Shown: positions 22,835 through 53,878 of the stretch, one piece after another
Position numbering within the stretch: position 1 is the first letter of the stretch
Layout of the letters: each line of letters opens with the position of its first letter
Virus record (IMG/VR): IMGVR_UViG_3300027834_000005
Coordinates: 62,001-126,000 of that record
Reading direction: 5' to 3' (one strand)
DNA length: 64,000 bases
Notes under the pieces: model-generated
Databases searched by the model: none
Told to the model about the DNA's origin: nothing
Seen by the model: the letters and a program-made list of their open reading frames with translations, nothing else
Program-made: the position numbers and the translations under genes

Positions 22835-22980
22835 AATACGAATCATTCTCATTTGCGCCTGTAAACCGTAATGCGAATCATTCTCATTCTCATCTATAAC
22901 TATCAGGCAGGAGTGGTGTTTATCTCCTCGGTTATCCCAAGCCATGTAAGTATTATACCTATCCTCACGTAGAGTGCAAG
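22835..22980 (-). ncRNA. Non-coding cassette A (promoter, ACACCACTCCTG core, 2 Fur-like boxes)
   Basis: -10 at 22952-22957(-); core 22908-22919; Fur-like boxes 22835-22853 and 22870-22888. Confidence 0.55.
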
Positions 22981-23004
22981 CATTTATTTGATATAATTTC
23001 AGAT

Positions 23005-23023
23005 AGTAATGATAATGATTATC
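23005..23023. promoter_or_regulatory. Fur box
   Basis: AGTAATGATAATGATTATC, 16/19 match to GATAATGATAATCATTATC. Confidence 0.55.
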
Positions 23024-23252
23024 CCTTAGTCTCTGCGATTACTCTAGTGTCGATATTATGCATAATATCGTGAGCGGTGGCAAGGGATATATACACTATT
23101 ACATGAGTACTTGTCCCCATAGTAGTTTTTATATAAGGAGATGATTCTGTATCTTTGGGTATTACCAGAATATTATTCTCATCATGCATACTGCCCGTCA
23201 TAGGTTTGTTGCTGTATACGCGCTCTGTTGATGATTCGTGTAATAGTTTCAT
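23019..23252 (-). CDS. Hypothetical early protein
   Basis: RBS AAGGAG; own promoter (duplicated at 23676-23730). Confidence 0.7.
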   Translation of the reverse strand: MKLLHESSTERVYSNKPMTGSMHDENNILVIPKDTESSPYIKTTMGTSTHVIVYISLATAHDIMHNIDTRVIAETKG

Positions 23253-23315
23253 GGTTATCTCCTTGTCTCTAAGTTGAATATGTAGTATAGTGTATCCATA
23301 TAAGAAGTCAAGGGT

Positions 23316-23501
23316 TTATTCTAAAGAATCATAGTTTAAATTACTGAGGTCGTTTATCACGACTAAGAGCAGAGATAGCTGCGCGTCTATTCTGTTATAG
23401 TTTTGACTACCAGCCCTACACTTACTCAGTCTTATCTCTAAGTTGCTAATTGTTTGGCGATAGTCGTTGATTAGGTCTTGTATAGACATAGACGATTTCA
23501 T
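23316..23501 (-). CDS. Hypothetical early protein
   Basis: ATGA-coupled to upstream gene. Confidence 0.65.
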   Translation of the reverse strand: MKSSMSIQDLINDYRQTISNLEIRLSKCRAGSQNYNRIDAQLSLLLVVINDLSNLNYDSLE

Positions 23502-23665
23502 GATTTAAACCCACTGAATGCTTCTAGTTCTTCTCTGAATGCTCTCTTAGAGTCGTCGTCGTGATACCCTTCATCCATGCCCATGCATATGCCATGATTG
23601 ATACATGCCCATACCATGTTCTTAAGGGCCTCTTGTGCTTCTTCTGATAGTTGGTCGTAGGTCAT
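23498..23665 (-). CDS. Hypothetical early protein
   Basis: Start MTYDQL after AAGGA RBS and promoter. Confidence 0.7.
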   Translation of the reverse strand: MTYDQLSEEAQEALKNMVWACINHGICMGMDEGYHDDDSKRAFREELEAFSGFKS

Positions 23666-23875
23666 GATAATGTCCTTGTCTCTAAGTTGAATATGTAGTA
23701 TAGTGTATCTATATAAGAAGTCAAGGGTTTTATTCAATGTATTTCATATTAGAGGCAATATCTATTATTGTCGTTATAGCATTAGTAACGGCTTTATTAT
23801 GTATTATATGGCTTTAGTTGTTGACACTGTAGTTATGGTGTGTATACTGGGTGTATATTAAATAAGGGGATAGCT

Positions 23876-24205
23876 ATGGCTATTGTAGTTAAGGCAGACC
23901 AGAAACTGTTAGATCGTCTTAAGGACGCTTCTGAACATGATGCTGTATTTGATGAGCTAACAGCTAAGAGTAACGCAATTGATCCTAGTGATAGCATTGT
24001 GGGTGCGTTCCTTGCGTTTTACATGGGTGATGGCTATGCCTATTACTTATGTACTAGCGAATCTCCATTAGAAGTACAGCATATCCCTTTATGGGATGAA
24101 TGGGAGATAAACGTTAAAGGGTTTGATAAGCAATACCTTACGCAGAAAATAGTTAATGAGCGTAGAATTAATGCTCTTAAGTCTAAACAAACCTTGACAT
24201 TGTAG
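23876..24205 (+). CDS. Hypothetical early protein
   Basis: Repeated leader tatactgggtgtatattaaataaggggatagctATG. Confidence 0.75.
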   Translation: MAIVVKADQKLLDRLKDASEHDAVFDELTAKSNAIDPSDSIVGAFLAFYMGDGYAYYLCTSESPLEVQHIPLWDEWEINVKGFDKQYLTQKIVNERRINALKSKQTLTL

Positions 24206-24248
24206 TTATACTCGCTATACTGGGTGTATATTAAATAAGGGGATAGCT

Positions 24249-24572
24249 ATGGCTACCGACATTAAAGTAATACATATGAGTAATACCTCTGGTGGGTATA
24301 ATAACACTACGGTAAAGTCTGCCACGGACAATGTAACGCCTTTAGTGGTTGCTACACGTAAGTATATCATTACCTCTACGTTATTAGAAGCATGTAACAG
24401 TGACTACTCCCCTGTAACGTTTAAGGCTGAAGTATGGAACGATAGGCTATCGGAGTGGAAAGATGTATATTACTTGCATATTACCCATGAGCGTGCTACT
24501 ATGTCTGTGGATGATTTTGTATCTAAGCATACTAAAGAAATAGAAGATATAATGCTTGCTATTTTGTTTTAG
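24249..24572 (+). CDS. Hypothetical early protein
   Basis: Same repeated leader. Confidence 0.75.
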   Translation: MATDIKVIHMSNTSGGYNNTTVKSATDNVTPLVVATRKYIITSTLLEACNSDYSPVTFKAEVWNDRLSEWKDVYYLHITHERATMSVDDFVSKHTKEIEDIMLAILF

Positions 24573-24612
24573 TGGGTTATACTGGGTGTATATTAATTAA
24601 GGGGAGAATCCC

Positions 24613-24801
24613 ATGCCACAGAAAATATCTTTTGGTACAGCCTTGATACTAGGTTTCCTAGGTCATCAGTTCGGTATGTCCGTATTACAGTTAGGTGCTA
24701 TCATTGTATTAGTTGCTGTTATAGCTACGGCTAGTTATGTACAGGGATTGCGTGAAGGTGATAAGATGGGTGCTGGTCGTATTAGACGTGGTGAAGGCTA
24801 A
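24613..24801 (+). CDS. Small membrane protein
   Basis: Two hydrophobic segments. Confidence 0.7.
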   Translation: MPQKISFGTALILGFLGHQFGMSVLQLGAIIVLVAVIATASYVQGLREGDKMGAGRIRRGEG

Positions 24802-24950
24802 TGTCTGATTGTGAACATAGTGATGATGGTGGAAAAACAACGTGTAGTGATATGTATAACTGCTGTAGTTGTGGCGGTAATGATTGTGGCTGTCGCTATT
24901 GTTTTGATTGTAATGCATGTGAAGAATGTTTAGGGGATGATGATGAGTAA
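24801..24950 (+). CDS. Cys-rich metallothionein-like peptide (49 aa)
   Basis: MSDCEHSDDGGKTTCSDMYNCCSCGGNDCGCRYCFDCNACEECLGDDDE; TAATG coupling; below ORF-track cutoff. Confidence 0.65.
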   Translation: MSDCEHSDDGGKTTCSDMYNCCSCGGNDCGCRYCFDCNACEECLGDDDE

Positions 24951-29986: not shown

Positions 29987-30190
29987 ATGAAAACAGCTCT
30001 ATTTGTAATCGCATTAAGTATGTGCTTATGTGCCCGTGCGCATATTCCTAATAATGCCCCTGTGCCATCTAACCATGTACTTAAGTGTGACATTGTAGAA
30101 AAGGTATGCATCCTATCTAACGTGAAGACGTCTACTTGTACAGCCAAGAAAGAACGTTGTTTAAGTAAAATAATTGATAAAAAGACTTGA
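29987..30190 (+). CDS. Small secreted Cys-containing protein
   Basis: Signal-peptide-like N-terminus. Confidence 0.6.
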   Translation: MKTALFVIALSMCLCARAHIPNNAPVPSNHVLKCDIVEKVCILSNVKTSTCTAKKERCLSKIIDKKT

Positions 30191-30246
30191 CCTTTAATTC
30201 CCCTATGCTATTATGGTTACACATTAAACGTTCTGAGGGGAACATC

Positions 30247-30819
30247 ATGGGTTGGACTTGCACACATAAACCAGACAATATCAAAGATCACTTAGACCAA
30301 GGAATGACTTGGGACACTGATACGCATTCTATGTGCGTACTTGAAAGTGCTTTGAAGAACTTCACTGAATACTACGCCGCCGTAGAACGTACCGATAAGG
30401 CTACTGGTGAGACAATGGTATTCGCCGCAATCACTTTAGTTACGTATCATAACAAAGGTTCTGAAGTATGCTTTAAGGACATGGACGAATCTGCAGGCCC
30501 GAACGCAGTTAAATGCCCACTATCTATCCTTAAGCTATTGACTCCCTTACCAGAAGATGATACATCTTATGCTGCTAAGTGGCGCGAGTCGTGCTACGCT
30601 TCGATTGAGGCTAGTAAGAAGATCACCAAACTAAAGCATGGCCAATTGGTTAAGTTCAAAAATGCTATTAGTTTTGGTATGAACGACAAATATACAGAAA
30701 TGTATGTGTATAAGCAAGGCAGAAAGCTACGCTTTGCCCCATACCCAACTATTAACATGAACTCTGCGCCACCGTATCAAATACGCCGCTCTTCATTACT
30801 GAACAACTTGGAGTCATAA
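30247..30819 (+). CDS. DUF6927-like protein
   Basis: MGW start; FKDMDESAGP..CPLSIL.LLTP..AAKWRE motif. Confidence 0.65.
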   Translation: MGWTCTHKPDNIKDHLDQGMTWDTDTHSMCVLESALKNFTEYYAAVERTDKATGETMVFAAITLVTYHNKGSEVCFKDMDESAGPNAVKCPLSILKLLTPLPEDDTSYAAKWRESCYASIEASKKITKLKHGQLVKFKNAISFGMNDKYTEMYVYKQGRKLRFAPYPTINMNSAPPYQIRRSSLLNNLES

Positions 30820-31031
30820 TGGAACAATTCGACACGGTATTACTAGCATACATTGTATTCTGTGTGCTATACTTACCAGCACACTACTTGGCATACAAGT
30901 TATGCCTGAATGCAGCTAAAAATGTATACATCGAACGCTTGACAACTGTGTTACGTCGTGCTATGTATGGGGATATAGCTGTAGTTGTTATTGGATTGAT
31001 CTATTTAATAGTTAAATATTTTATAATTTAA
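30819..31031 (+). CDS. Small membrane protein
   Basis: Two TM-like segments. Confidence 0.65.
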   Translation: MEQFDTVLLAYIVFCVLYLPAHYLAYKLCLNAAKNVYIERLTTVLRRAMYGDIAVVVIGLIYLIVKYFII

Positions 31032-31094
31032 TGCTTGACTCTATGTGTAACCCTGTTATTATGGTTACACATTAAACGTTCTGAGGGGAACATC

Positions 31095-31574
31095 ATGCAA
31101 AACAAATCACACTTGACCGCTATATCGCGCAGTAAGCTAAGCGCACCTATGCAATACTTACTTGACAATGGCGCATTGAACACAACAGTTGGCCTTGACT
31201 ATGGTAGTGGACGTGGGCATGATGCCGACTATATAGGCATGGATAAGTTTGACCCTTACTACACCAGCGGTAAGATCATGGAATGGGATAGGGACATACA
31301 CCATGATATGTTGGATATGTCCAGTGGCTATCAAGTTATCACTTGCAATTATGTGCTTAATGTGATTGAGGATCAAGCAGAGCGTGATATGGTGCTGCTA
31401 AATATCAAAATGTTACTGTGTGACACTGGAAAAGCATACATCACCGTGCGCCGCGACTCTCATGTGCAAGAAGGTTATACCAGTAAAGGTACATACCAAG
31501 CAACTATAGAACTAGATCTCCCTGTATATCATCATGCTAAAGGCAAATACATTACTTATTTGCTCGAAAAGTAG
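31095..31574 (+). CDS. Class I SAM-dependent methyltransferase
   Basis: TAISRSKLSAP, LDYGSGRG, FDPYY, ITCNYVLNVIED. Confidence 0.8.
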   Translation: MQNKSHLTAISRSKLSAPMQYLLDNGALNTTVGLDYGSGRGHDADYIGMDKFDPYYTSGKIMEWDRDIHHDMLDMSSGYQVITCNYVLNVIEDQAERDMVLLNIKMLLCDTGKAYITVRRDSHVQEGYTSKGTYQATIELDLPVYHHAKGKYITYLLEK

Positions 31575-31636
31575 TTGACTTCAGCGGTGACCATGGTATC
31601 ATGGTTACATATTAAATAGTTCTGAGGGGAACGATC

Positions 31637-31987
31637 ATGGCAGCTAAACACTATGTGTATCTAAACACTGTTAAGAAAAGTATGTCTATCAAGCTACGTG
31701 GTATTGTCATTGAACATACCAAGAGCAAGAAATTAATCAATGTTTTGTTTGACACTGTCAATGATGGTGCTATTATTAAAGCCGGTGATATTGCTGATAG
31801 AAACATTAGCGACTCACATGATCAAGACATCGTGGAAATTGTTGACTTCCCCAATGGTAAGTGGTATGTTCTTAGTACTAGAGAACAAGTACTAGGCGCT
31901 AAAGAAGCTGTTATTGTAGGCACGAAGATATTTTGCCATGAAGCTGACCTTAGTTACCCTGAAAAACAATTGACGTTGGAGGTATAG
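31637..31987 (+). CDS. Hypothetical early protein
   Basis: Family-1 leader. Confidence 0.7.
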   Translation: MAAKHYVYLNTVKKSMSIKLRGIVIEHTKSKKLINVLFDTVNDGAIIKAGDIADRNISDSHDQDIVEIVDFPNGKWYVLSTREQVLGAKEAVIVGTKIFCHEADLSYPEKQLTLEV

Positions 31988-31988
31988 C

Positions 31989-32468
31989 ATGTTACAGTTA
32001 CGCAAGAAGAATACCGCTCTGACTACTGGAGAACAAAAGACAGTAGACCGTGCGATGGAGGTACTCGATAGAGCAGCCAAGCGACAAGGTTCTGTGTTCA
32101 GTAGTATCTCTATGGTAAAGAAGTACTTTAAGACCAGACTATCGGGCTTAAGTAAAGAGAAATTTGAAGTTGCTTTCCTAGACACTGGACTGCGATTGAT
32201 TGAATGTGAAACTATGTTCGATGGATCTGCCGATTATGTCCATGTAGACGTAACAGAAATTACACGAAAGGCATTGACATTAAATGCCACACGTGTTATA
32301 CTGGCACACAATCACCCTAGCGGTAACGCTAATGCCAGTGACGGAGATAAACTCCTAACTAAAGAAATAAAGGGTGTACTTTCTCAATTTGATATAGTAC
32401 TATGTGACCATATCATAGTGGCGGACGGCAAGACACCGTTCTCTATGAGCGAAGCTAACTTATTATAG
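31989..32468 (+). CDS. radC: RadC-like JAB/MPN domain protein
   Basis: KEKFEVAFLD, HNHPSGNANASDGD, LCDHII. Confidence 0.85.
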   Translation: MLQLRKKNTALTTGEQKTVDRAMEVLDRAAKRQGSVFSSISMVKKYFKTRLSGLSKEKFEVAFLDTGLRLIECETMFDGSADYVHVDVTEITRKALTLNATRVILAHNHPSGNANASDGDKLLTKEIKGVLSQFDIVLCDHIIVADGKTPFSMSEANLL

Positions 32469-32477
32469 TGACGAACG

Positions 32478-41386: not shown

Positions 41387-41402
41387 TGTTTCACGTGAAA
41401 CA
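41387..41402. promoter_or_regulatory. parS site (ParB binding)
   Basis: TGTTTCACGTGAAACA, perfect consensus. Confidence 0.85.
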
Positions 41403-41407
41403 TTGTA

Positions 41408-41516
41408 AACGATAATCATTCTCATTAGGGGATAGCGGACAGGAGTAGTGTTTATCTTCGCCTCCTCCAGCGCCTCTATCTGTAACCATTATACATCTCC
41501 CCCATTACATAGCAAG
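41408..41516 (-). ncRNA. Non-coding cassette B
   Basis: -10 at 41488-41493(-); core 41440-41451; Fur-like box 41408-41426; parS follows. Confidence 0.55.
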
Positions 41517-42892: not shown

Positions 42893-42893
42893 G

Positions 42894-44651: not shown

Positions 44652-44678
44652 AAATAGCTTGACTTTTGAATCGTATCA

Positions 44679-44709: not shown

Positions 44710-44756
44710 GTTTATAAATTAGTTTACAGCATAGTCTAGGTGTGTTATAATAGCGC

Positions 44757-45380
44757 ATGATTAAATATACTGTAGAACAAATAGAAAGAAAAGATTGCGA
44801 ACCATACATAATAGGTATACACTACGCCAAACGATGGCCAAGTATCTCCTATGCGTATGGTTTATTTGCTGATGGCGACCTATGCGGGATTGTATCATAC
44901 GGCACACCACCTAGCGCACCACTCAAGCGCGGCATAGCAGGAGACGATTATAAGGATAAAATCCTTGAACTCAATCGATTATGCTTACTCCACAACAGAA
45001 AGAACGAAGCCAGTATACTTGTAGGCCAAAGCCTCAAGATGCTACCAAGGAATCGTATCATTGTATCTTTTGCCGACATAAGCCAAGGTCACACAGGCAC
45101 AGTATACCAAGCAACCAATTTTACATACTGCGGACTAAGCGCCAAGCGTACTGACTGGAAGGTGAAAGGCAAGGAACACTTACACGGCCAAACCATAGCA
45201 GACGAGTTCAGAGGCGTAAAGAACAGAGCACAGGCAATGCGCGACAAGTACGGTGATGACTTCTATCTGGCACCACGCCCACGTAAACATAGATACATCT
45301 ATTTCTGTGGTGGGAAGAACTTTAGAAAACATGCCATACGCGCACTAAAATATAAAGTAGAAGATTATCCCAAAAAGTAG
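44757..45380 (+). CDS. Mom-like (GNAT-fold) DNA adenine modification protein
   Basis: HYAKRWPS, LELNRL, IVSFAD..QGHTGTVYQATNF.YCG, RKHRYIYF. Confidence 0.75.
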   Translation: MIKYTVEQIERKDCEPYIIGIHYAKRWPSISYAYGLFADGDLCGIVSYGTPPSAPLKRGIAGDDYKDKILELNRLCLLHNRKNEASILVGQSLKMLPRNRIIVSFADISQGHTGTVYQATNFTYCGLSAKRTDWKVKGKEHLHGQTIADEFRGVKNRAQAMRDKYGDDFYLAPRPRKHRYIYFCGGKNFRKHAIRALKYKVEDYPKK

Positions 45381-45449
45381 TTGACATTAAATGTGACCAT
45401 GCTATTATGGTCACACATCAAACGAAACAAGTTCTGAGGGGAACACATC

Positions 45450-46019
45450 ATGGGCTATACAACTGAATTTACCGGCAAAATCGAAATCGTACCAGCTCTT
45501 AATGAGACTGAAATTAAGTACATCCAGCAATTCAATGACACACGTCGTATGGAACGTACCAACGGTGCATACTTTGTTGGCGGCACTGGCATGTGTGGTC
45601 AAGGTCAAGACGATGATATCATCAATTACAATCAGCCACCACAAGGCCAACCATCACTGTGGTGTCAGGTAACATGTTCAGACGATGGTAAGTATTTAGA
45701 ATGGGACGGCGGCGAGAAAGCATATAGCATGGAAATCTGGATGCTTTATATCATTAAACACTTCTTAGGTAAAGACCCAATTGCTAGACAGGTAAACAAA
45801 TCTTTTGGCTTCCTTAAAGGTCACATGCTTAATGGTACGCTAGCAGCCGAAGGCGAGAGCCACGATGATAACTGGCAGATCAGCGTTATTGATAACGTAG
45901 TGTACAAGCAAGAGCACGACGAAAGCAAGCTAGGTTTAGGCGAACTGGTACAGGTTGAACTTGAAGTAGGGCAACTGGCACTATCTAACTCACCCACCGG
46001 ATTATTAGAACACAGTTAA
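45450..46019 (+). CDS. Conserved phage hypothetical protein
   Basis: MGYTTEFTG..PSLWCQ..WDGGEK motif familiar from phage hypotheticals. Confidence 0.75.
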   Translation: MGYTTEFTGKIEIVPALNETEIKYIQQFNDTRRMERTNGAYFVGGTGMCGQGQDDDIINYNQPPQGQPSLWCQVTCSDDGKYLEWDGGEKAYSMEIWMLYIIKHFLGKDPIARQVNKSFGFLKGHMLNGTLAAEGESHDDNWQISVIDNVVYKQEHDESKLGLGELVQVELEVGQLALSNSPTGLLEHS

Positions 46020-46069
46020 GGCGGCGATTAAGTAGCGCCTTATATACTCAGACGAATTCATAAGCCTTT

Positions 46070-46098
46070 GCCCATCCCTAAAAAAGATGGGCTTTTTT
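46070..46098 (+). terminator. Terminator
   Basis: gcccatc...gatgggc followed by T6. Confidence 0.65.
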
Positions 46099-46162
46099 GT
46101 GTCTTACCTATTGACATTGTGTGTGTAGCACGTATAATTATCACATAACTAAGGGGCACGCC

Positions 46163-46699
46163 ATGAACATTCCATTATTTGATAAATTCCAAGCGCTAGT
46201 AGTAGAACATTACAATCCCAAACACATGCCCCTTACTAATTACCCTCGCGGTGATTGGGTAGACGACGAAACATTCATCTCCATAGCAGAAGGTTACTTG
46301 ACGTGGTTAGACAAAAACCTAGAGCGTTTAGTGGACAATGTAACCGCCATATATGAAGCAACTGGCTACGAGTCTGGATATTCCGCGCTAACCGAGAACT
46401 TATTATGGAAGCGTGAGATTATAATAGATCACCCTGAAAGAGCATACAGCCGTGAGAGTATAAAAGGCAACATATTAGAGAAGTCATTATCGCCATTATA
46501 TCACTTGTATCAGAATAAAGCATGGGGTAAGCGTGAGAAGTCAGAGAGGTTCGGGTTCACTGGCTCACTAGTAACATCTTCACTGAACGTAGAAGTAGAA
46601 GAAAGCGTCAGGCGAGGTAAGATGGACGTGTCTTATTCTTTCCATATTAGCATGAGTATTGGCAGTACTCACAGAGGCGTTATAGAAATAGCAGAATAA
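46163..46699 (+). CDS. Hypothetical early protein
   Basis: Promoter duplicated at 46703. Confidence 0.75.
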   Translation: MNIPLFDKFQALVVEHYNPKHMPLTNYPRGDWVDDETFISIAEGYLTWLDKNLERLVDNVTAIYEATGYESGYSALTENLLWKREIIIDHPERAYSRESIKGNILEKSLSPLYHLYQNKAWGKREKSERFGFTGSLVTSSLNVEVEESVRRGKMDVSYSFHISMSIGSTHRGVIEIAE

Positions 46700-46757
46700 A
46701 CCTTGACTTTGTGTGTGTGTAGCACGTATAATGATTACATCAACTAAGGGGAACACC

Positions 46758-47288
46758 ATGCAAGTAGCCATTTGGAACAACGATAAAGTCGAAGGCGAAA
46801 CATACGCTGAAGTACAAGAGAACGAAAAGGAAGAGAAAGGCACAGTGTCCTCTGTCCTTACACTACCAACAAATTCGATGTATGTCTTAAAGGATATACT
46901 GGAAGCTGTCTATAACGAAACTGACATTAGTCTGAAATGGGAAATCGTTGGTGATGTTGCGCCAGTAACACTACCAAAAGTTACCGATTTGCCAGTGCCC
47001 AACTTCATCAATGTTGAGCGTAATAACCGCAACGCTGCCATCGAGTTCATTAACGGTAGCTTAGCAAGAGCCATACTCAGTAAGATGAATAGCACTAACG
47101 TACGTCCTAAAGACGGCAAGTTCCACACTAGCATGAAAGATCCTGACGTGTCAAAAGAAGTTCTAGTCATCGTTAAGGAAATGGCTAAGGTGCTAGGCTA
47201 CACACTATCAGATAGCCACGATGGTGGCGGCATGTTCTACGTATTAGCCATTCAATGGCAAATAGATCTTGACACGCTAGAAGACTAG
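46758..47288 (+). CDS. Hypothetical early protein
   Basis: AAGGGGAAC RBS. Confidence 0.75.
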   Translation: MQVAIWNNDKVEGETYAEVQENEKEEKGTVSSVLTLPTNSMYVLKDILEAVYNETDISLKWEIVGDVAPVTLPKVTDLPVPNFINVERNNRNAAIEFINGSLARAILSKMNSTNVRPKDGKFHTSMKDPDVSKEVLVIVKEMAKVLGYTLSDSHDGGGMFYVLAIQWQIDLDTLED

Positions 47289-47325
47289 CGGTATTATAAC
47301 CACACACTCACATAGGGATACAATC

Positions 47326-47631
47326 ATGGCTAAGATGCAGATAATTACATGTTTATGTGGGTGTGGCGGTAAGAAAGCAGTACGCCAAGCTGATATTGAT
47401 CGCGGCTGGGGATTGTACTACAGTAAGCGCTGTAAGGCTAAGCACCAAGCCCAAGGGTTTAAGTCTCCAACCGCCAACAAGAAACGTTCTGTTAAGCACG
47501 ATAAGTATGACAGACAGTATACCAAGGGCGGTGTAGCAACTACATGGTATTTTGGTTCTGATCAAGAACACGACGACCTGATGGATGAAGCCGAAATGGG
47601 CTGGGATGCACACAAGGATATCACGTTATGA
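47326..47631 (+). CDS. Zn-finger-like phage protein
   Basis: CLCGCG..ADIDRGWG.YYSKRCKA. Confidence 0.7.
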   Translation: MAKMQIITCLCGCGGKKAVRQADIDRGWGLYYSKRCKAKHQAQGFKSPTANKKRSVKHDKYDRQYTKGGVATTWYFGSDQEHDDLMDEAEMGWDAHKDITL

Positions 47632-48125
47632 CTATCAATGCAACTATAAATTTTAAGCTTGATCTGTATGGCGATAATACGCATAGTTTCCTATCTAGGA
47701 TAGATATTTTATCTTACCCTCAAAACAAAGATATATGCGACATAATACGCGAGTATATCAGAGATGGCTTGACAGTAGAGTGCGAATACGTTAATGACAT
47801 TGACGGTCTATATGAGTACTACGTCCCTATATACTTTGAAGACGTGAAGCCAGAAGAGCTAAGCGATATAGCTATGAAAGCAGCTGATTCTATAGCTGAA
47901 GCGGTAGCAAGTTTTAAGAGCGAGTACCACGTTGATGAGTACTACAAAATATACGAACGCTTCGAGAAAGTATACACCGACTACATGATAGATGGCGAAA
48001 CTGTAATGTATGAGCGTTTGGCTGGCAAGGGGTATCGTCTGAGAAACTGGCAGAATGCAGAGAGCTATCTATATACACGTTTATTTTGCAAAAAGACCTT
48101 GACGCCACGTTCAGAGCTGGTATAG
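47628..48125 (+). CDS. Hypothetical protein
   Basis: ATGA coupling. Confidence 0.7.
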   Translation: MTINATINFKLDLYGDNTHSFLSRIDILSYPQNKDICDIIREYIRDGLTVECEYVNDIDGLYEYYVPIYFEDVKPEELSDIAMKAADSIAEAVASFKSEYHVDEYYKIYERFEKVYTDYMIDGETVMYERLAGKGYRLRNWQNAESYLYTRLFCKKTLTPRSELV

Positions 48126-48150
48126 TAGACACATAACTAAGGGGAACACT

Positions 48151-48315
48151 ATGAACATTGAACACTTCGTAAACGGCAAGAGCACAGGCACTATCACTCC
48201 AGACACCAAAGCATGGCGTGATCATTCCATCAACTTCCAAGCACGTAGTGATGCTCACTACCAACCATCGCGCCCGTCTAAAGTGACGTTTGTTGAGGTG
48301 CCGCGCAATGCCTAA
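48151..48315 (+). CDS. Small hypothetical protein (54 aa)
   Basis: AAGGGGAAC RBS; MNIEHFVNG. Confidence 0.6.
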   Translation: MNIEHFVNGKSTGTITPDTKAWRDHSINFQARSDAHYQPSRPSKVTFVEVPRNA

Positions 48316-48508
48316 TCTAATCGCATGTGTCGTGATGGCACTCTGTTTATTATTCAATCTAGTGCGCTGGTTAATGCTACCAGAGGACATACGCCTAGCT
48401 ATTGACATATTCATGCTGTTTGTTTTCGTGGAACTTTTTTTGACTTTCTGCTTCTTAATGAATTTTGATAAAGCTAAGAAATATATCTCGAAGTACTGCC
48501 GATCATAA
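48308..48508 (+). CDS. Small membrane protein
   Basis: Two hydrophobic segments. Confidence 0.55.
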   Translation: MPNLIACVVMALCLLFNLVRWLMLPEDIRLAIDIFMLFVFVELFLTFCFLMNFDKAKKYISKYCRS

Positions 48509-48514
48509 CAGTCT

Positions 48515-48579
48515 GAATAGCAAATGTAAATGCCATTTTTGAACCACATTTTTGAATGGCATTTTTGAATCTCATACCC
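48515..48579. repeat. 13-bp-period repeat array, copy 3
   Basis: gaatagcaaatgt aaatgccattttt gaaccacattttt gaatggcattttt gaatctcataccc. Confidence 0.75.
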
Positions 48580-48744
48580 GCGCCACACTCCCGCGCCACA
48601 CACGACACGTCAGTCACACGCGAACATATACTCGCACGAATACATACGTGCATATAATATCACACATTATATACATATAGCGCTTGACAACGTGTGTACC
48701 TATGCTATTATAGGCACACATTAACAAGTTCTGAGGGGAACACC

Positions 48745-49047
48745 ATGAGTACAACATCTACTAAGTCATTGCGCATTAGAACCTACACTGGTTATATTAA
48801 CACACAAGCCATCGTCATTGGCGAGCACGTAGCTACTAACACCTACATTGCCGCGAAAGGCATCATAGGCGGTCTGTGGGACGTAGACCATACCGAGGCA
48901 CAAGAGATTATCATGGGCGCTATCGTAGGCACTGAAGCGATACACAGAACTAGATTATGTAGTGATGGTGATGTAACAATGAGATTGATAGTGGATGTCA
49001 TAGAAACAGACGCCACTGAGATCAAAGATGAGTATGCATACGCATAG
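48745..49047 (+). CDS. Hypothetical early protein
   Basis: Family-1 leader. Confidence 0.75.
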   Translation: MSTTSTKSLRIRTYTGYINTQAIVIGEHVATNTYIAAKGIIGGLWDVDHTEAQEIIMGAIVGTEAIHRTRLCSDGDVTMRLIVDVIETDATEIKDEYAYA

Positions 49048-49106
49048 TCACACAGTCCACCATCATACCACACATGTAGTTATCCGCAACATGTTTATTC
49101 ATACAG

Positions 49107-49180
49107 TACTGGTTGGATATACAGTACTGGTTGGATATACAGTACTGGTTGGATATACAGTACTGGTTGGATATACAGTG
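49107..49180. repeat. Four tandem LexA SOS boxes (18-bp repeat)
   Basis: CTG-GTTGGATATA-CAG at 49109, 49127, 49145, 49163; reverse strand reads TACTGTATATCCAACCAGTA. Confidence 0.8.
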
Positions 49181-49189
49181 GATTTGGTA

Positions 49190-49283
49190 AACGCGAATCA
49201 TTCGCATTCGCATTCTCATTACCCAAATAGCAGGCAGGAGTGGTGTAGCTCTATTATACTAGCATTCACAACAACAACACAAG
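49190..49283 (-). ncRNA. Non-coding cassette C
   Basis: TTGTGT..TATAAT(-); core starts at predicted +1 (49246); Fur-like hexamers 49190-49220. Confidence 0.55.
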
Positions 49284-49481
49284 CTTTATTTCATCTAATT
49301 AAATATAAAATGAATGAATAAAAAGCTTTACATATACAGCCAGTTCTATAATATAGGTGGCACTTGTTTAGAACAACAAACAAAAAGAAAGACAAATAAA
49401 AGCTTGCAATACTCTTTCACTTGTCTATAATGAGAATCATCAAAACAAAAAAACAAAAACTTTTATATAACGGGCTTACTT

Positions 49482-50102
49482 ATGAACATTATCTCTTCTT
49501 TGAAAAAAGCAACATTGGCTAAAATCGAATCAGCACAGGCGAATGCAGCCATTACTAAACGCGCAAACGGCGCACGTATCACAGCGGGACAAGTGGCGGC
49601 AATCGCGGCAACTAAGCCAGCACTGGTTAAACTAACACAAGTCACGCCTGTAGCACTAGCAGCAGCCAACAAACAGCGCAACATTGTTAAGGTAGCACAA
49701 ACAGTGTGTATCTTGCCTAATGATTCGGACGTATACACAAGCGCCATTAAGCACACGGCAAAAGGTAGCGCCGAAGATATCGCAGCATATACGCCACGCG
49801 AAAGCAAGTATAATCATTGCGGTAGTGCTTATGCAGCGCTAACACTTAAATCAGATGATAGCAAGGAATATTTATATACAATTCAAGACAATTGTACAAA
49901 ATCTGTACTAGTTGACGCCGACACTGGCACAGTTTTAGAAAAAGCGCAAGTTGCTGAATTAATGACCAAATCAGCAGCCAAAAAATTGCTAGGTGATACC
50001 AGCGCAGAAAAAACCAACAAAACCTTTGACATTGAGCACGATGTATGCGTACGCACAATCAAGATGGAAAATGTTATTAAGATGGAAGAAGTATCCATCT
50101 AA
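49482..50102 (+). CDS. Hypothetical early protein (paralog of 37276..37839)
   Basis: Tandem promoters upstream; shared C-terminal motifs. Confidence 0.8.
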   Translation: MNIISSLKKATLAKIESAQANAAITKRANGARITAGQVAAIAATKPALVKLTQVTPVALAAANKQRNIVKVAQTVCILPNDSDVYTSAIKHTAKGSAEDIAAYTPRESKYNHCGSAYAALTLKSDDSKEYLYTIQDNCTKSVLVDADTGTVLEKAQVAELMTKSAAKKLLGDTSAEKTNKTFDIEHDVCVRTIKMENVIKMEEVSI

Positions 50103-50116
50103 TAGAACGCTAACAC

Positions 50117-50145
50117 AAAAGACTGGCATTGTCCAGTCTTTTTTT
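50117..50145. terminator. Bidirectional terminator
   Basis: aaaagactgg-cattgt-ccagtc followed by T-run; near-copy at 55192-55218. Confidence 0.75.
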
Positions 50146-50147
50146 AT

Positions 50148-50251
50148 ATACGAATGATTCTCAATTGCAAATGATTATCATTCTCATTACCCAAATACCA
50201 TGCAGGAGTGGTGTAAGGTCATTATACTACCAACCACAACAACAACACAAG
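50148..50251 (-). ncRNA. Non-coding cassette D
   Basis: -10 at 50221-50226(-); core 50203-50214; Fur box 50170-50188; runs into the bidirectional terminator. Confidence 0.6.
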
Positions 50252-50374
50252 CTTTATTTCATCTAAATTAAATATAAAAAGAATGAATAAAAAGCTTTAC
50301 ATACTCAGCTCGTTCTATATAATGATTACATCAGCTAAGGGATTACCTCTTAGCACCCTTTGAGAGTATTTGCT

Positions 50375-50926
50375 ATGTCTTCACGTAGAATTAATGTATC
50401 AGTTGAACAGTTAGCCACAGAAGCGAAACAGAACGAATTAGCCCGTGTGGACGCAATTAATGCAACTCGTAACATGCTCAATAAGTTACAGCCCTTAATT
50501 GCTGCGCGTATAGCCAAAGGTATTAAGTTTAAAAACGACGGTAGCCCATACGCTAAAGACGCCAAAGATATTGCCGCTATCGTAGCCAATGCGGTTGGTG
50601 GTGAAAAAATACATGTTATGGTAATGTATAAAGAAATCCCTAACCCAATTAGACCTATTCCTTCGACTATACGCATACAGGCAAGGGCGCACTATAGCAA
50701 AATTAGCTCAATATATAACGACTTGAACGGAAAACCGGACGTAAGCGGCCAGAGCTGCGAGGAAAATGCCTATGTGGGTGTTGCTGAGTCTTTCGAGTAC
50801 AAAGATAAACCGCTTTTATCAGTGGATCAAGTAGTAAAGGCTAAAGCCAGAATCACAGAAATAGACGACCTGATAAGTGCATTAAATGGCGAGCGTTCCG
50901 CACTTGCGCACTCTATTGATCTTTAA
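50375..50926 (+). CDS. Hypothetical early protein
   Basis: Family-2 promoter. Confidence 0.75.
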   Translation: MSSRRINVSVEQLATEAKQNELARVDAINATRNMLNKLQPLIAARIAKGIKFKNDGSPYAKDAKDIAAIVANAVGGEKIHVMVMYKEIPNPIRPIPSTIRIQARAHYSKISSIYNDLNGKPDVSGQSCEENAYVGVAESFEYKDKPLLSVDQVVKAKARITEIDDLISALNGERSALAHSIDL

Positions 50927-51018
50927 TACACATTAATACTTTACATACTCAGCTAGTTCTGTATAATGATTACATCAGCTAGGGGATTGTCCCCTAGCAC
51001 CTTTTAAGAGTATTTGCC

Positions 51019-51312
51019 ATGACTACTGTCGCTGCTATTGCCACCGCTACGCCTAAAGATATGATGATAAAACATGTTAACTTTTGTTTCCCTGTCGCTT
51101 GTGCCCGTGATGGACAAGATTTCTTTAAGCACGCATCAGACACTATACACTTAAACTCTAAAAATGTCATCTTGAAGTTTACGCCGTTGTATGATAGCAA
51201 GACGCGCACTGTCGAGAAAGTATTCGATAACTTTCTAAAAAGCCACGGGTGGTACTTAGAAGCGTACACGGTAACAGAACTAATCTTAAGAAAACGCATA
51301 ACACACAATTAA
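51019..51312 (+). CDS. Hypothetical early protein
   Basis: Family-2 promoter. Confidence 0.7.
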   Translation: MTTVAAIATATPKDMMIKHVNFCFPVACARDGQDFFKHASDTIHLNSKNVILKFTPLYDSKTRTVEKVFDNFLKSHGWYLEAYTVTELILRKRITHN

Positions 51313-51321
51313 ACCGTTCTA

Positions 51322-51337
51322 TGTTTCACGTGAAACA
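51322..51337. promoter_or_regulatory. parS site
   Basis: TGTTTCACGTGAAACA, perfect consensus. Confidence 0.85.
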
Positions 51338-51357
51338 TTACCCACTATATGTGGGTA

Positions 51358-51439
51358 AATGCGTATCATTCTCATTAAGTAAATAGCGGACAGGAGTGGT
51401 GTAAGGTCATTATACTACCAACCGCAACAACAACACAAG
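51358..51439 (-). ncRNA. Non-coding cassette E
   Basis: -10 at 51409-51414(-); core 51391-51402; Fur-like box 51358-51376; parS follows. Confidence 0.6.
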
Positions 51440-51528
51440 CTTTTTCTTTATTATCTTTTTGCACAATAAAGCTTTACATACTCAGCTAGATCTGTATAAT
51501 TCAGTAATGTTTATAAGGTTCTATGTGT

Positions 51529-51939
51529 ATGAAAACTACAGACAAGCAAACAAATATATCAGGTTTTTGGCGTATGTGCGCGAGCATCATATTTGACGTT
51601 GTTGCGCACGACGGTGGCGGCTTATCATACTCTTATTACCACGGCAGACAGTTAAGGTCTGGATGTATGCATGATCCTAAGCTATTCACGCAGAATTACA
51701 CACAGTTTAACGTAGATAGCGCAGAAAAAGACCTTGAAGCATTTATTAATGTATTCAATACTTTACATGCTGCCAATGACGCGCTAACAGAGGAAAAACA
51801 ATTTATATTTGATAAAGTTGACACACTAATAACTTTACTGTATAGGGCAGGCGTGGATTATGATGGTGTTACACTAGACATTGACTATAGAAAAGACCAC
51901 CCAACGTATAGCAGAAATAGTAAGTTTTCTTTTCAATAA
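51529..51939 (+). CDS. Hypothetical early protein
   Basis: Family-2 promoter. Confidence 0.7.
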   Translation: MKTTDKQTNISGFWRMCASIIFDVVAHDGGGLSYSYYHGRQLRSGCMHDPKLFTQNYTQFNVDSAEKDLEAFINVFNTLHAANDALTEEKQFIFDKVDTLITLLYRAGVDYDGVTLDIDYRKDHPTYSRNSKFSFQ

Positions 51940-52021
51940 AGCTTTACATACTCAGCTAGATCTGTATAATTGTTAACAAGTCGGGGGCATACAGCAACCG
52001 ACACAGTTTAGAGTATTTGTT

Positions 52022-52399
52022 ATGACTTTTTCTATCGTTAGTTCTACTGCAAAAACCATCTTCACCCCTAGTGCATCTACTCCGCGCCATGAACACGACT
52101 GCGACTGTTGTACATTTACTGGTACTTACGGCGACTATGATCTTTATCATTGCCCTAAGAGCGATGAGGGCACGATCATAGCACGTTTCGGCATTGATGG
52201 CGATTACTATAGCCGCCCGTTATCCTTATGTAAAAGTTCAATGAGCTGTGATCATCCATTGTCTGCCGCCCTTGCTGCATATAAGGAGCACACAGAACAA
52301 CCCGTAACAATTGGCGATCTTATCAAGCGACAAATGGACGAGTCAACCTTTAAAGAAGAACATCTAGCGCATTTTAATAAATGTCTTAATAGGGAATAA
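52022..52399 (+). CDS. His/Cys-motif hypothetical protein
   Basis: PRHEHDCDCC..DLYHC. Confidence 0.75.
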   Translation: MTFSIVSSTAKTIFTPSASTPRHEHDCDCCTFTGTYGDYDLYHCPKSDEGTIIARFGIDGDYYSRPLSLCKSSMSCDHPLSAALAAYKEHTEQPVTIGDLIKRQMDESTFKEEHLAHFNKCLNRE

Positions 52400-52486
52400 A
52401 AACCCTTTACATACTCAGCTAGTTCTGTATAATTGTTAACAAGTCGGGGGCATACAGCAACCGACACCTTTTTGAGAGTATTTACC

Positions 52487-52663
52487 ATGGCTACATTAGT
52501 TGCTGCGAAACAAGTTAAAGCTGGCGATCTTATCATGGACAAGGGCACAAAGCGACAAGTGTCTATGGTTCGCGTATCAGGTGGCGGCGTCGATATCTAT
52601 TGTGTATGTGGCGAGCATTTAGACAAGATAGCCGATCAACAAGTATCATTGGTGGAGGTGTAA
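52487..52663 (+). CDS. Small hypothetical protein
   Basis: Family-2 leader. Confidence 0.65.
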   Translation: MATLVAAKQVKAGDLIMDKGTKRQVSMVRVSGGGVDIYCVCGEHLDKIADQQVSLVEV

Positions 52664-52665
52664 TC

Positions 52666-52857
52666 ATGGCTAGTGTATACGGTGTTAATAGTCCTCGTAG
52701 TGGTCACATAGATGTAAGCAATACGGAACGTGGTGCAAAGAACTACGCAACGCGCAACGGCTACACAGAAGTAACAGAGCGCAACACAAATCACATGACG
52801 GCTATTATCATAGCTGAAAAACATGATGGTATGTGGTGCAAACCTTATTCATTATAG
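52666..52857 (+). CDS. Small hypothetical protein
   Basis: GGAGG RBS. Confidence 0.65.
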   Translation: MASVYGVNSPRSGHIDVSNTERGAKNYATRNGYTEVTERNTNHMTAIIIAEKHDGMWCKPYSL

Positions 52858-52943
52858 TAGTTGACATACTCAGTCAGTTCTATATAATTGTTAACAAGTC
52901 GGGGGCATACAGCAACCGACACAAATCAAAAACGGGATTTATC

Positions 52944-53198
52944 ATGGCTTCATACAAACTTTCTACTATTGCCGCTATCTACGCACTACAACAAGCCATC
53001 GTTGCCGATAAAGCACCTTGCACCCTAACGCAACATTACTTTGCCAAGCAAGTGGTACAGATTGCCGAGCAAGTAGATAACGAGTTTATCATTGATACGC
53101 CTTTAGAGGAAGTCAAAGCAAGCGTTCAATGCGCGTATGATTTTGCTAAGGTTGTGGCGGATAGTGGCGGCCTTGTATACACTCAGGCGAGTGTATAA
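52944..53198 (+). CDS. Small hypothetical protein
   Basis: Family-2 leader. Confidence 0.65.
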   Translation: MASYKLSTIAAIYALQQAIVADKAPCTLTQHYFAKQVVQIAEQVDNEFIIDTPLEEVKASVQCAYDFAKVVADSGGLVYTQASV

Positions 53199-53269
53199 CT
53201 ATGGCTATCACGTTATCAGTTATCATGGTTCTTTCTTTTCCTTTAGTCTTTAGCCTGTAGGGGTTTATT

Positions 53270-53614
53270 ATGCTATTAGTCATTAATGCACTAGAACAAG
53301 TCAAAAGCGGCACTGATGGCGCGGCCACTATAATCTCTCATATTAACGCGCACCCACTCAAAGCGCTTATTGCTGAAGGGCTTTATGAAAAGGTACGGGA
53401 ACGCGATAACATAGCAGATAAACGCTATTCATTACAGGCACGCCGTAAAAAGGCCGACAAGTACACAAACACCGACGCTATGGATAAAGACATAGAAGCG
53501 TTAGGGTTGCAAGAAGATGCCCTAGATGGCGATATAGAGGCCATAGTGCATGAATCTAAGAAAATGCTAAACTTTGAAATTGCATTGATTGTAAACGAAT
53601 TCTCAAAATATTAA
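53270..53614 (+). CDS. Hypothetical coiled-coil protein
   Basis: 114-aa ORF. Confidence 0.65.
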   Translation: MLLVINALEQVKSGTDGAATIISHINAHPLKALIAEGLYEKVRERDNIADKRYSLQARRKKADKYTNTDAMDKDIEALGLQEDALDGDIEAIVHESKKMLNFEIALIVNEFSKY

Positions 53615-53632
53615 ATAAGCCTTTGGGGGGAC

Positions 53633-53711
53633 TTGTGTCCCCTCTTTTTTTGTGTATAATAGAACCACACCACTCCTGCCTGCTATTCCACTAATGAGAA
53701 TGATTATCATT
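53633..53711 (+). ncRNA. Non-coding cassette F
   Basis: TTGTGT-N16-TATAAT; core 53667-53678 at predicted +1; Fur box AATGAGAATGATTATCATT at 53693-53711. Confidence 0.6.
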
Positions 53712-53716
53712 CACAC

Positions 53717-53732
53717 TGTTCCACGTGAAACA
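53717..53732. promoter_or_regulatory. parS site
   Basis: TGTTCCACGTGAAACA fits TGTTNCACGTGAAACA. Confidence 0.8.
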
Positions 53733-53756
53733 TAAACTAACACGCAATCAACTCTA

Positions 53757-53878
53757 AATGAGAATGATTCCCAACAACTGATAGCAGACAGGAGTAGTGT
53801 TTGCCTCCTAGCTCCGCAGCTAGCCCCAATCCCTTATCTCTTAATACCTATTATAATGATCTGAATACATAACGCAAG
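53757..53878 (-). ncRNA. Non-coding cassette G (converges on F)
   Basis: -10 at 53850-53855(-); core 53789-53800; partial Fur-like box at 53757. Confidence 0.55.

What the first reader, a model, noticed from the sequence alone, without database searches (positions are those of the whole stretch)
22835..53878. Seven promoter-driven non-coding cassettes sharing a 20-nt core with an anti-Shine-Dalgarno-like seed and a downstream Fur box
Seen: ACACYACTCCTGYCYGCTAT (transcribed sense) at 22908, 41440, 49235, 50203, 51391, 53789 (all -) and 53667 (+). Each lies downstream of TTG(T/C)..TATAAT and upstream of an AATGAGAAT-type Fur-like box, with no ORF. In four copies the core begins exactly 7 nt after the -10 hexamer, which is the predicted +1. 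In the other three, a 32-49-nt leader supplies AGGAG that can pair with the core CUCCU. Six run antisense to the bulk of early genes, and F and G converge. Inference: a multicopy small-RNA family whose 5' ACUCCU seed could mask host AGGAG ribosome-binding sites (many phage early genes use GAGGGGAAC instead) or sponge a host RNA or protein, possibly tuned by iron. Alternatively the core is a DNA site or a replication primer.
Basis: partly seen in the sequence, partly recalled or inferred. Interest (0 to 1): 0.8.

Follow-up and report, generated by a model that had tools for sequence, protein, structure and literature searches.

The report
Transcribed phage cassettes carrying host operator sites
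A giant uncultured marine phage carries seven promoter-driven, protein-free cassettes that begin with the same 20-letter tag and hold docking sites for the host's iron sensor (Fur), DNA-damage repressor (LexA) and chromosome-partition protein (ParB), so the phage probably reads, or hijacks, the state of its host through them.

Summary
All fall in a 31-kb stretch of a 347-410 kb marine phage genome. Each core sits downstream of a sigma-70-type promoter, and in four copies it starts exactly at the predicted +1. At least 22 further copies occur in six contigs of related uncultured phages.

The "Fur-like box" is a genuine Fur box. The exact palindrome occurs at least 120 times in bacterial genomes, often next to iron-uptake genes.

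New findings:
- Three cassettes also carry perfect chromosomal parS sites.
- One carries four tandem LexA-type boxes.
- A DnaA-box cluster lies 1.4 kb away.
- In this window, strong host-protein sites occur almost only in or beside these cassettes.

No conserved RNA fold, Rfam match, regular terminator or transcript data was found.

Best reading (about 0.4): host-repressor-gated non-coding transcription units sharing a functional 5' RNA tag. Main rival: DNA-level decoy or hijack pads for host proteins.

The parts
22812..22979 (-). Cassette A. -35 at 22979-22974, -10 at 22957-22952, 32 nt between the -10 and the core, core at 22919-22900. Two Fur-type hexamer arrays (about 22893-22865 and 22853-22812). 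Runs into an iteron-like repeat field at 22500-22830. A further Fur-like box lies upstream at 23005-23029.
41387..41515 (-). Cassette B. -35 at 41515-41510, -10 at 41493-41488, 36 nt between the -10 and the core, core at 41451-41432. Fur box at 41405-41429, perfect parS at 41387-41402.
49089..49282 (-). Cassette C. -10 at 49258-49253, core at 49246-49227 (starts at +1), Fur-type hexamer array at 49190-49220. Four 18-bp-spaced LexA-type 20-mers at 49107-49180, plus a fifth unit at 49089-49108.
   Evidence: the fifth unit matches a consensus LexA box in L008:6915-6934
50110..50250 (-). Cassette D. -10 at 50226-50221, core at 50214-50195 (2 mismatches; +1). Two Fur boxes at 50148-50191. Bidirectional terminator hairpin at 50117-50142. 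This is the only window copy that looks like a discrete RNA of about 100 nt.
51322..51438 (-). Cassette E. -10 at 51414-51409, core at 51402-51383 (+1), Fur box at 51355-51376. An unassigned 19-bp palindrome at 51339-51357 and a perfect parS at 51322-51337.
53633..53732 (+). Cassette G. -35 at 53633-53638 (overlaps the terminator of gene 53270-53614), -10 at 53655-53660, core at 53667-53686 (+1). Fur box at 53690-53714; perfect parS at 53717-53732, shared with F.
53755..53877 (-). Cassette F, convergent with G. -35 at 53877-53872, -10 at 53855-53850, 49 nt between the -10 and the core, core at 53800-53781, Fur-like box at 53755-53775. The parS therefore sits at the centre of a promoter-core-Fur / Fur-core-promoter mirror arrangement.
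49482..50102 (+). Gene X (206 aa), flanked by cassettes C and D. The same cassette-gene-cassette arrangement is present in relatives L008 and L011, and one flanking cassette is present in L005. Its own promoter (49404-49431) overlaps a Fur-like box at 49426-49444.
   Evidence: family and fold
55235..55554 (.). Cluster of eight DnaA boxes (five perfect), just right of the DUF932 gene. This is origin-like context for the cassettes.

Best explanation
The cassettes are non-coding transcription units read by the host sigma-70 RNA polymerase.

Proposed mechanism:
- Transcription starts at, or 20-45 nt before, a conserved pyrimidine-rich 16-20-nt tag (ACACCAC-n-CCU-R-Y-C-Y-G).
- It must then pass binding sites for host DNA-binding proteins placed in the transcribed body. 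A Fur box begins about 27 nt after the start of the core in nearly all copies. Some copies add a parS site (ParB) or an array of LexA boxes.
- In a healthy, iron-replete host these proteins would occlude or road-block the unit.
- On iron limitation, DNA damage or loss of ParB, RNAs carrying the common 5' tag would be made and would extend antisense into the neighbouring early gene.
- The tag is the functional RNA part: a shared single-stranded seed or protein-binding handle, as in sibling sRNAs. The differing operator cargo would let different host signals control the same tag.

Shown: the sequences, their conservation, the coupling of promoter to core, and the identity of the operator motifs.
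Inferred: that the units are transcribed, that Fur, LexA and ParB bind them, and what the tag does.
For: - Real and multicopy: 7 copies against 0.03 expected. All lie in 31 kb of a 347-kb contig.
- Always transcribed from the same side: 28 of 28 copies in seven contigs lie downstream of a sigma-70-like promoter in the same orientation. About 16 have the core exactly 6 nt after a TATAAT-like -10, including 8 of 8 in L005 and 3 of 3 in L008, with 10-11 of 12 consensus matches.
- Selection on the core: positions 1-7, 9-11 and 19-20 are near invariant across phages whose flanking proteins are only 47-70% identical. In a 96%-identical relative the core is unchanged or reverts to consensus, while 3-4 of the 6 spacer bases differ.
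- RNA-like character: the core is asymmetric, 42% C and 10% G, and mostly unpaired in folds. The long-leader copies share a conserved GAGRYAA just before the core, which fits processing to the same 5' end.
Six of 10 sampled neighbouring genes encode iron-uptake functions.
- parS: three perfect sites against 0.01 expected. They match the consensus listed in PMC7022226, Table 1.
- LexA array, with a consensus LexA box at the homologous place in L008.
- Strong Fur, parS and LexA-array matches occur only in or beside cassettes among about 135 genes in this window.
Against: - No transcript data. No RNA run could be listed, so the promoters and the +1 are predictions.
- Only about 5 of 28 copies have a terminator-like hairpin within 100 nt.
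- No conserved secondary structure and no Rfam match.
- No target was found, and the host is unknown.
- A Fur box at +27 to +45 is downstream of the usual operator position. ParB is not a classical repressor.
- The core-to-box spacing is held at 6-8 nt even in long-leader copies, which hints at DNA-level coupling.
- L156 and L158 have the core without a Fur box, and L155 has Fur and LexA boxes without the core. The two parts are therefore separable.
Confidence: 0.4

Rival explanations
1. DNA-level decoy or hijack pads. The cassettes, together with the nearby DnaA-box cluster, would recruit or titrate abundant host DNA-binding proteins (Fur, LexA, ParB, DnaA) as the phage genome amplifies. This would derepress iron uptake and SOS functions, disturb host replication and segregation, or coat the phage DNA. 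The promoter and core would be accessory, for example keeping the sites open or holding polymerase.
For: - Four kinds of host-protein site are concentrated in non-coding DNA rather than at promoters of phage protein genes.
- The sites come as arrays: Fur hexamer arrays in A and C, 4-5 LexA boxes in C, and 8 DnaA boxes.
- Core-to-Fur-box spacing is conserved.
- From my own knowledge, multicopy Fur boxes titrate Fur (the FURTA assay) and the datA locus titrates DnaA.
Against: - It does not explain why every copy has a consensus promoter with the core at +1, or why 16-20 nt of asymmetric sequence are conserved across distant phages.
- Transcription through the decoys would lower their occupancy.
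- L156 and L158 cassettes lack Fur boxes.
Confidence: 0.25
2. Replication and partition control region of a mini-chromosome-like phage, possibly a phage-plasmid. The parS sites would be working centromeres near a DnaA-dependent origin. The flanking Fur-gated promoters would make centromere or origin activity conditional on host state, or insulate it from early-gene transcription.
For: - Three parS sites lie within 14 kb of a DnaA-box cluster.
- Iteron-like repeats lie beside cassette A, and similar iterons with four DnaA boxes lie beside gene X in L005.
- parS lies beside a cassette in the distant relative L156.
- In G/F the parS sits at the centre of mirrored Fur boxes and convergent promoters.
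Against: - No ParA, ParB or Rep gene was recognised among 75 ORFs from 23-64 kb.
- Most cassettes in relatives carry no parS.
- The core itself remains unexplained.
- The window's phage-like content (tail-related proteins) identifies a phage, but nothing found here points to plasmid-style maintenance.
Confidence: 0.15
3. Mobile regulatory cassettes comparable to the PeSL elements of T4-type phages. Repeated promoter modules would serve mainly as homology for recombination that shuffles small early genes, and the core would be conserved as the recombination substrate.
For: - Copies flank single genes.
- The cassette-gene X-cassette unit is conserved in three phages, and in L008 it is inverted relative to the neighbouring gene block.
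- C, D and E share about 100 bp including the divergent + promoter (families D11 and D15).
- Gene order around the cassettes is mosaic.
Against: - Homology for recombination does not require the core at +1.
- It would not keep 16 nt identical across phages at 47% protein identity while the adjacent spacer diverges.
- It does not explain the operator cargo.
Confidence: 0.1
4. One reading: sRNAs whose 5' ACUCCU masks host AGGAG ribosome-binding sites or acts as an anti-SD-like sponge.
For: - CUCCU is present and unpaired in C, D, E and G.
- Phage early genes use a different RBS, GAGGGGAAC (families D5 and D9).
- The same 16 nt are kept in L011 and L156.
Against: - L005 and L008 replace CUCCU by ACCUA, GCCUA or CGCUG, and position 8 is free (information content 0.19 bits).
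- RBS motifs of the four phages do not track the core.
- A 5-nt anti-SD match would be unspecific.
Confidence: 0.05

Closest known systems
Fur-repressed small RNAs such as RyhB and PrrF (from my own knowledge)
   Same: A sigma-70 promoter, an adjacent Fur box and no ORF. PrrF1/PrrF2 and RyhB1/RyhB2 are multicopy.
   Different: There is no sequence or Rfam similarity. The box lies downstream of +1 rather than over the promoter. Most copies lack a terminator. Extra parS and LexA sites are present. The elements are phage-encoded and antisense to early genes.
Sibling sRNA families such as Qrr1-5 and OmrA/B (from my own knowledge)
   Same: Several genes share one short conserved single-stranded segment and differ elsewhere. 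Each has its own promoter and regulator sites.
   Different: The shared segment is at the extreme 5' end with no conserved Hfq-type 3' module. No target is known, and the regulator sites lie inside the transcribed body.
PeSL mobile regulatory cassettes of T4-type phages (Arbiol et al. 2010, from memory)
   Same: Short repeated promoter-containing intergenic modules flank small early genes in a plastic region of a large phage.
   Different: PeSLs are an early promoter plus stem-loop, co-directional with the genes. These cassettes are mostly antisense, have no conserved stem-loop, carry host operator sites, and share a conserved +1 tag.
Chromosomal parS/ParB centromeres (PMC7022226), and ParB acting as a transcription road-block near the S. 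pneumoniae com operon (from memory)
   Same: The 16-bp sites at 41387, 51322 and 53717 match TGTTNCACGTGAAACA perfectly. They lie in the path of a promoter.
   Different: They sit in a phage, inside non-coding cassettes next to Fur boxes, and no par genes were seen nearby.
Prophage-encoded anti-sRNAs AgvB and AsxR of EHEC (Tree et al. 2014, from memory)
   Same: Phage-borne, multicopy short RNAs with C/A-rich segments that mimic mRNA target sites and sponge host sRNAs.
   Different: No homology was tested or found, the host and partner sRNA are unknown, and those RNAs are not linked to operator arrays.

Membership tests
Fur box (Fur operator) | 19-bp 9-1-9 (or 7-1-7) inverted repeat of the GATAAT-type hexamer | tested here: met
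   AATGAGAATnATTCTCATT-type sites follow 7 of 7 cores, with 3-5 mismatches to the E. coli 19-mer. Perfect palindromes occur in L011.
Fur box (Fur operator) | Occurs upstream of iron-uptake genes in bacteria | tested here: met
Six of 10 sampled flanking genes are FbpA-type binding proteins, a TonB-dependent receptor or an FTR1 permease.
Fur box (Fur operator) | Bound by Fur in vitro or in vivo | not testable with these tools
   Needs EMSA, ChIP or a FURTA assay.
Chromosomal parS | 16-bp palindrome TGTTNCACGTGAAACA | tested here: met
   Three perfect matches against 0.01 expected. The consensus is taken from PMC7022226, Table 1.
Chromosomal parS | Cognate ParB available, and sites clustered near an origin | tested here: inconclusive
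   A DnaA-box cluster lies 1.5-14 kb away. No ParB was found in 23-64 kb, and the host is unknown.
LexA (SOS) box, gammaproteobacterial type | CTGT-N8-ACAG within a 20-bp palindrome | tested here: inconclusive
   The four repeat units read CTGT-N8-CCAG and match 16 of 20 consensus positions. From memory, the uvrB and lexA boxes also use CCAG. The homologous site in L008 is a perfect CTGT-N8-ACAG.
Trans-acting Hfq-type sRNA gene | Own promoter and conserved single-stranded seed | tested here: met
Trans-acting Hfq-type sRNA gene | Rho-independent terminator with a U tail defining a short RNA | tested here: not met
   Present only in D and in about 4 copies in L005. About 23 of 28 copies have none within 100 nt.
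Trans-acting Hfq-type sRNA gene | Conserved complementarity to a target | tested here: not met
   No target was found in four phage loci beyond the core's own antisense strand. There is no covariation with RBS motifs. Host targets could not be tested.
Any Rfam family | Covariance-model match | tested here: not met
   Only two tRNAs pass the gathering threshold. Nothing is found at E up to 5 in 48900-54100.
PeSL-type mobile promoter cassette | Early promoter plus conserved stem-loop, co-directional with the flanked ORFs | tested here: not met
   Six of 7 copies are antisense, and there is no shared stem-loop.
nut, put or Q-type antitermination site | Promoter-proximal RNA or DNA element followed by an operon read through terminators | tested here: not met
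   No downstream genes lie in the direction of transcription for 6 of 7 copies. The palindrome is degenerate in ways that would break an RNA hairpin.

The most novel reading that the evidence does not exclude
A megaphage carries a dedicated 'host-factor hub'. This would be a set of transcription-gated arrays of Fur, LexA and ParB sites, next to a DnaA-box cluster. Through it the phage would either sequester four global host DNA-binding proteins at once, or make its own centromere and origin conditional on host iron and DNA-damage status. The shared 5' tag RNA would be the read-out.
Probability: 0.25. Interest if true: 0.9.

Novelty: new variant of a known kind. Interest (0 to 1): 0.72.

Why it matters
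Phage use of host regulators is known mainly for temperate switches (LexA) and a few toxin genes (Fur). Here a very large, apparently lytic-type marine phage lineage devotes conserved non-coding modules to sites for the host's iron sensor, SOS repressor and chromosome-partition protein, all wired to one RNA tag.

If the cassettes are sensors, they show how a phage can integrate several host stress signals without encoding a single regulator. That is relevant to infection outcome in iron-limited oceans.

If they are decoys or centromeres, they would be a new way of taking over host DNA transactions.

Either way the family is compact and can be tested with reporters and purified Fur, LexA and ParB. 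The parS, LexA and Fur motif types also narrow the unknown host to a Proteobacterium with a ParABS system.

Tried and rejected
- Near-identity search in GenBank phages: no match.
- Exact and relaxed core patterns in IMG/VR: only the window's own contig.
- Core-plus-box pattern in JGI metagenomes: the same phage as a 410-kb contig, one real relative (L030), and chance hits in coding DNA.
- DUF932 protein and profile in IMG/VR: self only.
- Rfam at gathering and permissive thresholds: nothing.
- A common RNA fold: none.
- A stem closing the core onto downstream sequence: significant only in F/G and L011:4890.
- Leader-core hairpin: not better than shuffled leaders, except in one L156 copy. The leader end GAGRYAA is conserved rather than covarying.
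- A mini-ORF starting in the box: no SD, not conserved. Rejected.
- Core as an anti-SD or RBS-directed seed: rejected.
- A bacterial origin of a core-plus-Fur-box unit: no core next to the box in 120 bacterial loci.
- Gene X as a clue. It belongs to a family of 140 representatives with a confident model (pLDDT 94). It has no PDB, Pfam or PHROG match; only uncharacterised phage proteins resemble it.
- RNA sequencing runs: none listed. Read laying showed only DNA relatives, at roughly 90-95% identity, in marine sediments.
- Resemblances of the core to 16S rRNA, 4.5S RNA, tmRNA, Chi, rut, marbox and CRISPR repeats were considered from memory. None was convincing.

Full report
**Observation.** A mismatch-tolerant search finds exactly seven copies of the 20-nt core, against 0.03 expected by chance. 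They lie at 22900, 41432, 49227, 50195, 51383 and 53781 on the minus strand and 53667 on the plus strand. Reading each locus and aligning them confirms the anatomy. C, D, E and G have a perfect TATAAT, 6 nt, then the core, so the core's first A is the predicted +1. A, B and F have TTGC-N16-TATAAT followed by 32, 36 and 49 nt before the core. After a 6-8-nt spacer, every core is followed by an AATGAGAAT-type box. Six copies point against the + strand early genes, and G and F converge.

**Genomic setting.** The window belongs to an uncultured marine phage. It is held as a 347-kb IMG/VR contig and a 410-kb JGI contig, with no close GenBank relative. DNA runs from a marine metagenome and from marine sediments hold it or relatives of roughly 90-95% identity. 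The region is a typical early region:
- more than 100 small + strand genes;
- many consensus sigma-70 promoters;
- shared promoter and 5'-UTR families with the RBS GAGGGGAAC.

All seven cassettes lie in 31 kb, and there are none elsewhere on the 347-kb contig. A profile search finds no further diverged copy in the window.

**Relatives.** Homologues of the gene between C and D (gene X) and of the DUF932 gene led to contigs of related phages. These carry the same kind of cassette:

| Locus | Copies | Notes |
|---|---|---|
| L005 | 8 | all short type, consensus promoters |
| L008 | 3 | all short type |
| L011 | 4 | mixed short and long |
| L156 | 5 | all long-leader, no Fur box |
| L030 | 1 | |
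| L158 | 1 | long-leader, no Fur box |

Sources for the table are. Across the 28 copies tabulated:
- Positions 1-7 (ACACCAC), 9-11 (CCU) and 19-20 are nearly invariant.
- Position 8 is free.
- Positions 12, 13 and 15 vary by transitions only.
- Composition is 42% C and 10% G.

In L005 and L008 all 11 copies have a 10-11 of 12 consensus promoter with the core exactly 6 nt after the -10. In a 96%-identical relative (L034) the core is unchanged in C. In D it reverts to the consensus. Meanwhile 3-4 of the 6 spacer bases differ. The core is therefore under selection and tied to the transcription start. The cassette-gene X-cassette arrangement recurs in the window, L008 and L011. In L008 the unit is inverted relative to its neighbours.

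**What the boxes are.**
- *Fur.* The palindrome AATGAGAATnATTCTCATT was scanned across one genome per bacterial species. Of ten flanking genes sampled, six encode Fe(III)-type binding proteins, a TonB-dependent receptor or an FTR1 iron permease. It is a bona fide Fur box. The phage copies vary as Fur boxes do (GATAAT half-sites, hexamer arrays in A and C), in ways that would break an RNA hairpin.
- *parS.* A full-text search for the second palindrome in B, E and G/F returned ParB-parS papers. The sites at 41387-41402, 51322-51337 and 53717-53732 match the chromosomal centromere consensus TGTTNCACGTGAAACA perfectly (PMC7022226 Table 1). Three sites are found against 0.01 expected. The distant relative L156 has a parS variant beside one of its cassettes.
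- *LexA.* The 18-bp tandem repeat in C makes four overlapping 20-mers with CTGT-N8-CCAG and 16 of 20 consensus positions. The fifth, terminal unit corresponds to a perfect CTGT-N8-ACAG box at the homologous position of a cassette in L008.
- *DnaA.* Eight DnaA boxes cluster at 55235-55554, right after the DUF932 gene. L005 has four DnaA boxes and iterons next to gene X. Those iterons resemble the repeats beside cassette A.

In this window, strong Fur, parS and LexA-array matches occur only in or directly beside cassettes. The one partial exception is a Fur-like box over the promoter of gene X.

**Tests of an RNA function.**
- Rfam finds nothing.
- Folds show no shared structure. The core is unpaired in the short copies.
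- A stem closing the core onto downstream sequence is significant only for the F/G mirror pair and one L011 copy.
What is conserved at the leader end is the sequence GAGRYAA, not a covarying partner.
- CUCCU is replaced in L005 and L008.
- The RBS motifs of the four phages do not follow the core.
- The only strong complements of the core in these loci are its own antisense strands.
- Only about 5 of 28 copies have a terminator-like hairpin within 100 nt. D is the one clear case in the window.
- No RNA run could be listed.

**Interpretation.** The invariant orientation behind a promoter, the exact +1 placement in most copies and the asymmetric pyrimidine-rich sequence favour a transcript-level role for the core. 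So does the conserved junction in the long-leader forms. The operator motifs act as DNA. Putting the two together, I favour host-protein-gated non-coding transcription units with a common 5' tag (confidence about 0.4).

The main rival (about 0.25) is that the sites work purely at DNA level, as decoys or landing pads for Fur, LexA, ParB and DnaA. This explains the arrays and their restriction to non-coding DNA, but not the promoter-core coupling. A replication and partition reading (about 0.15) is suggested by parS plus DnaA boxes plus iterons. A PeSL-like recombination role (about 0.1) fits the mosaic gene order. The anti-SD model is not supported (about 0.05).

**Side results.**
- Gene X belongs to a wide family of 140 representatives. 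Its model is confident (pLDDT 94). It has no match in PDB, Pfam or PHROGs. Only uncharacterised phage proteins resemble it.
- Among 75 ORFs from 23-64 kb, the only Pfam hits are Mom, RadC, DUF932, GP88, DUF6927, a methyltransferase, a tail collar domain and a weak DUF4240 match. None is a ParB, Fur, LexA or RNA chaperone.

Noticed in passing
window 55235-55700: Origin-like region directly after the DUF932 gene. It has eight DnaA boxes (five perfect TTATCCACA) in 320 bp, G/C-rich blocks, and an 11-bp tandem repeat at 55653-55694.
   Followed up: partly
window 22190-22830: An 830-bp non-coding switch region between + and - genes. A consensus + promoter near 22385 faces cassette A across iteron-like repeats of about 37 bp period (22551-22648) and a long hairpin near 22440-22510. 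The repeat motif resembles the iterons next to DnaA boxes in L005:9830-9965.
   Followed up: partly
window 51339-51357: A perfect 19-bp palindrome (TACCCAC-ATATA-GTGGGTA) is inserted between the Fur box and the parS of cassette E. No known operator could be assigned.
   Followed up: no
window 49404-49444: The + promoter of gene X (TTGCAA-16-TATAAT) overlaps a Fur-like box (TATAATGAGAATCATC). It is the only protein-coding gene in the window seen with such a box.
   Followed up: partly
window 49482-50102 and 37276-37839: Gene X has a paralogue in the window and belongs to a family of 140 cluster representatives. Its predicted fold is confident (pLDDT 94) and matches nothing in PDB, only uncharacterised phage proteins.
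   Followed up: yes
window 30167-48750 (about 12 sites): A family of early promoter and 5'-UTR modules. An imperfect palindrome (GTGACCAT ... ATGGTCAC) brackets the -10, followed by a shared leader and the RBS GAGGGGAAC. It looks like an operator for an unknown regulator.
   Followed up: no
window 1-22200: Dozens of paralogous genes of about 100-130 aa share conserved C-terminal coding motifs (repeat families D1, D3, D6, D10). This is a large expanded gene family of unknown function.
   Followed up: no
window 22228-22270, 40796-40832, 48529-48570: Three intergenic loci carry 13-bp tandem repeats (AATGGCATTTTT-like) in a shared 58-nt module (repeat family D14). Possibly another protein-binding array.
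   Followed up: no
window 38979-39055 and 39222-39298: tRNA-Arg(TCT) and tRNA-Met genes lie in the early region.
   Followed up: no
L005, L008 and L011 (e.g. L011:4943-4954, 8481-8565; L005:9619-9698): A 12-nt motif, ACCGTTnGTCGG, is repeated next to cassettes and DnaA boxes in the relatives but is absent from the window.
   Followed up: partly
L155:798-1091, 1324-1977, 6085-6639: A more distant relative, binned as a Desulfobacterales MAG, encodes a CsrA homologue, a TerD protein and an integrase-family protein. It has Fur boxes (2710-2766) and a LexA box (6992-7007) but no core.
   Followed up: partly
window 23000-64000: Anti-defence-type genes are present (Mom-like, RadC-like JAB, a methyltransferase, DUF932). 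This fits a first-expressed takeover region.
   Followed up: no
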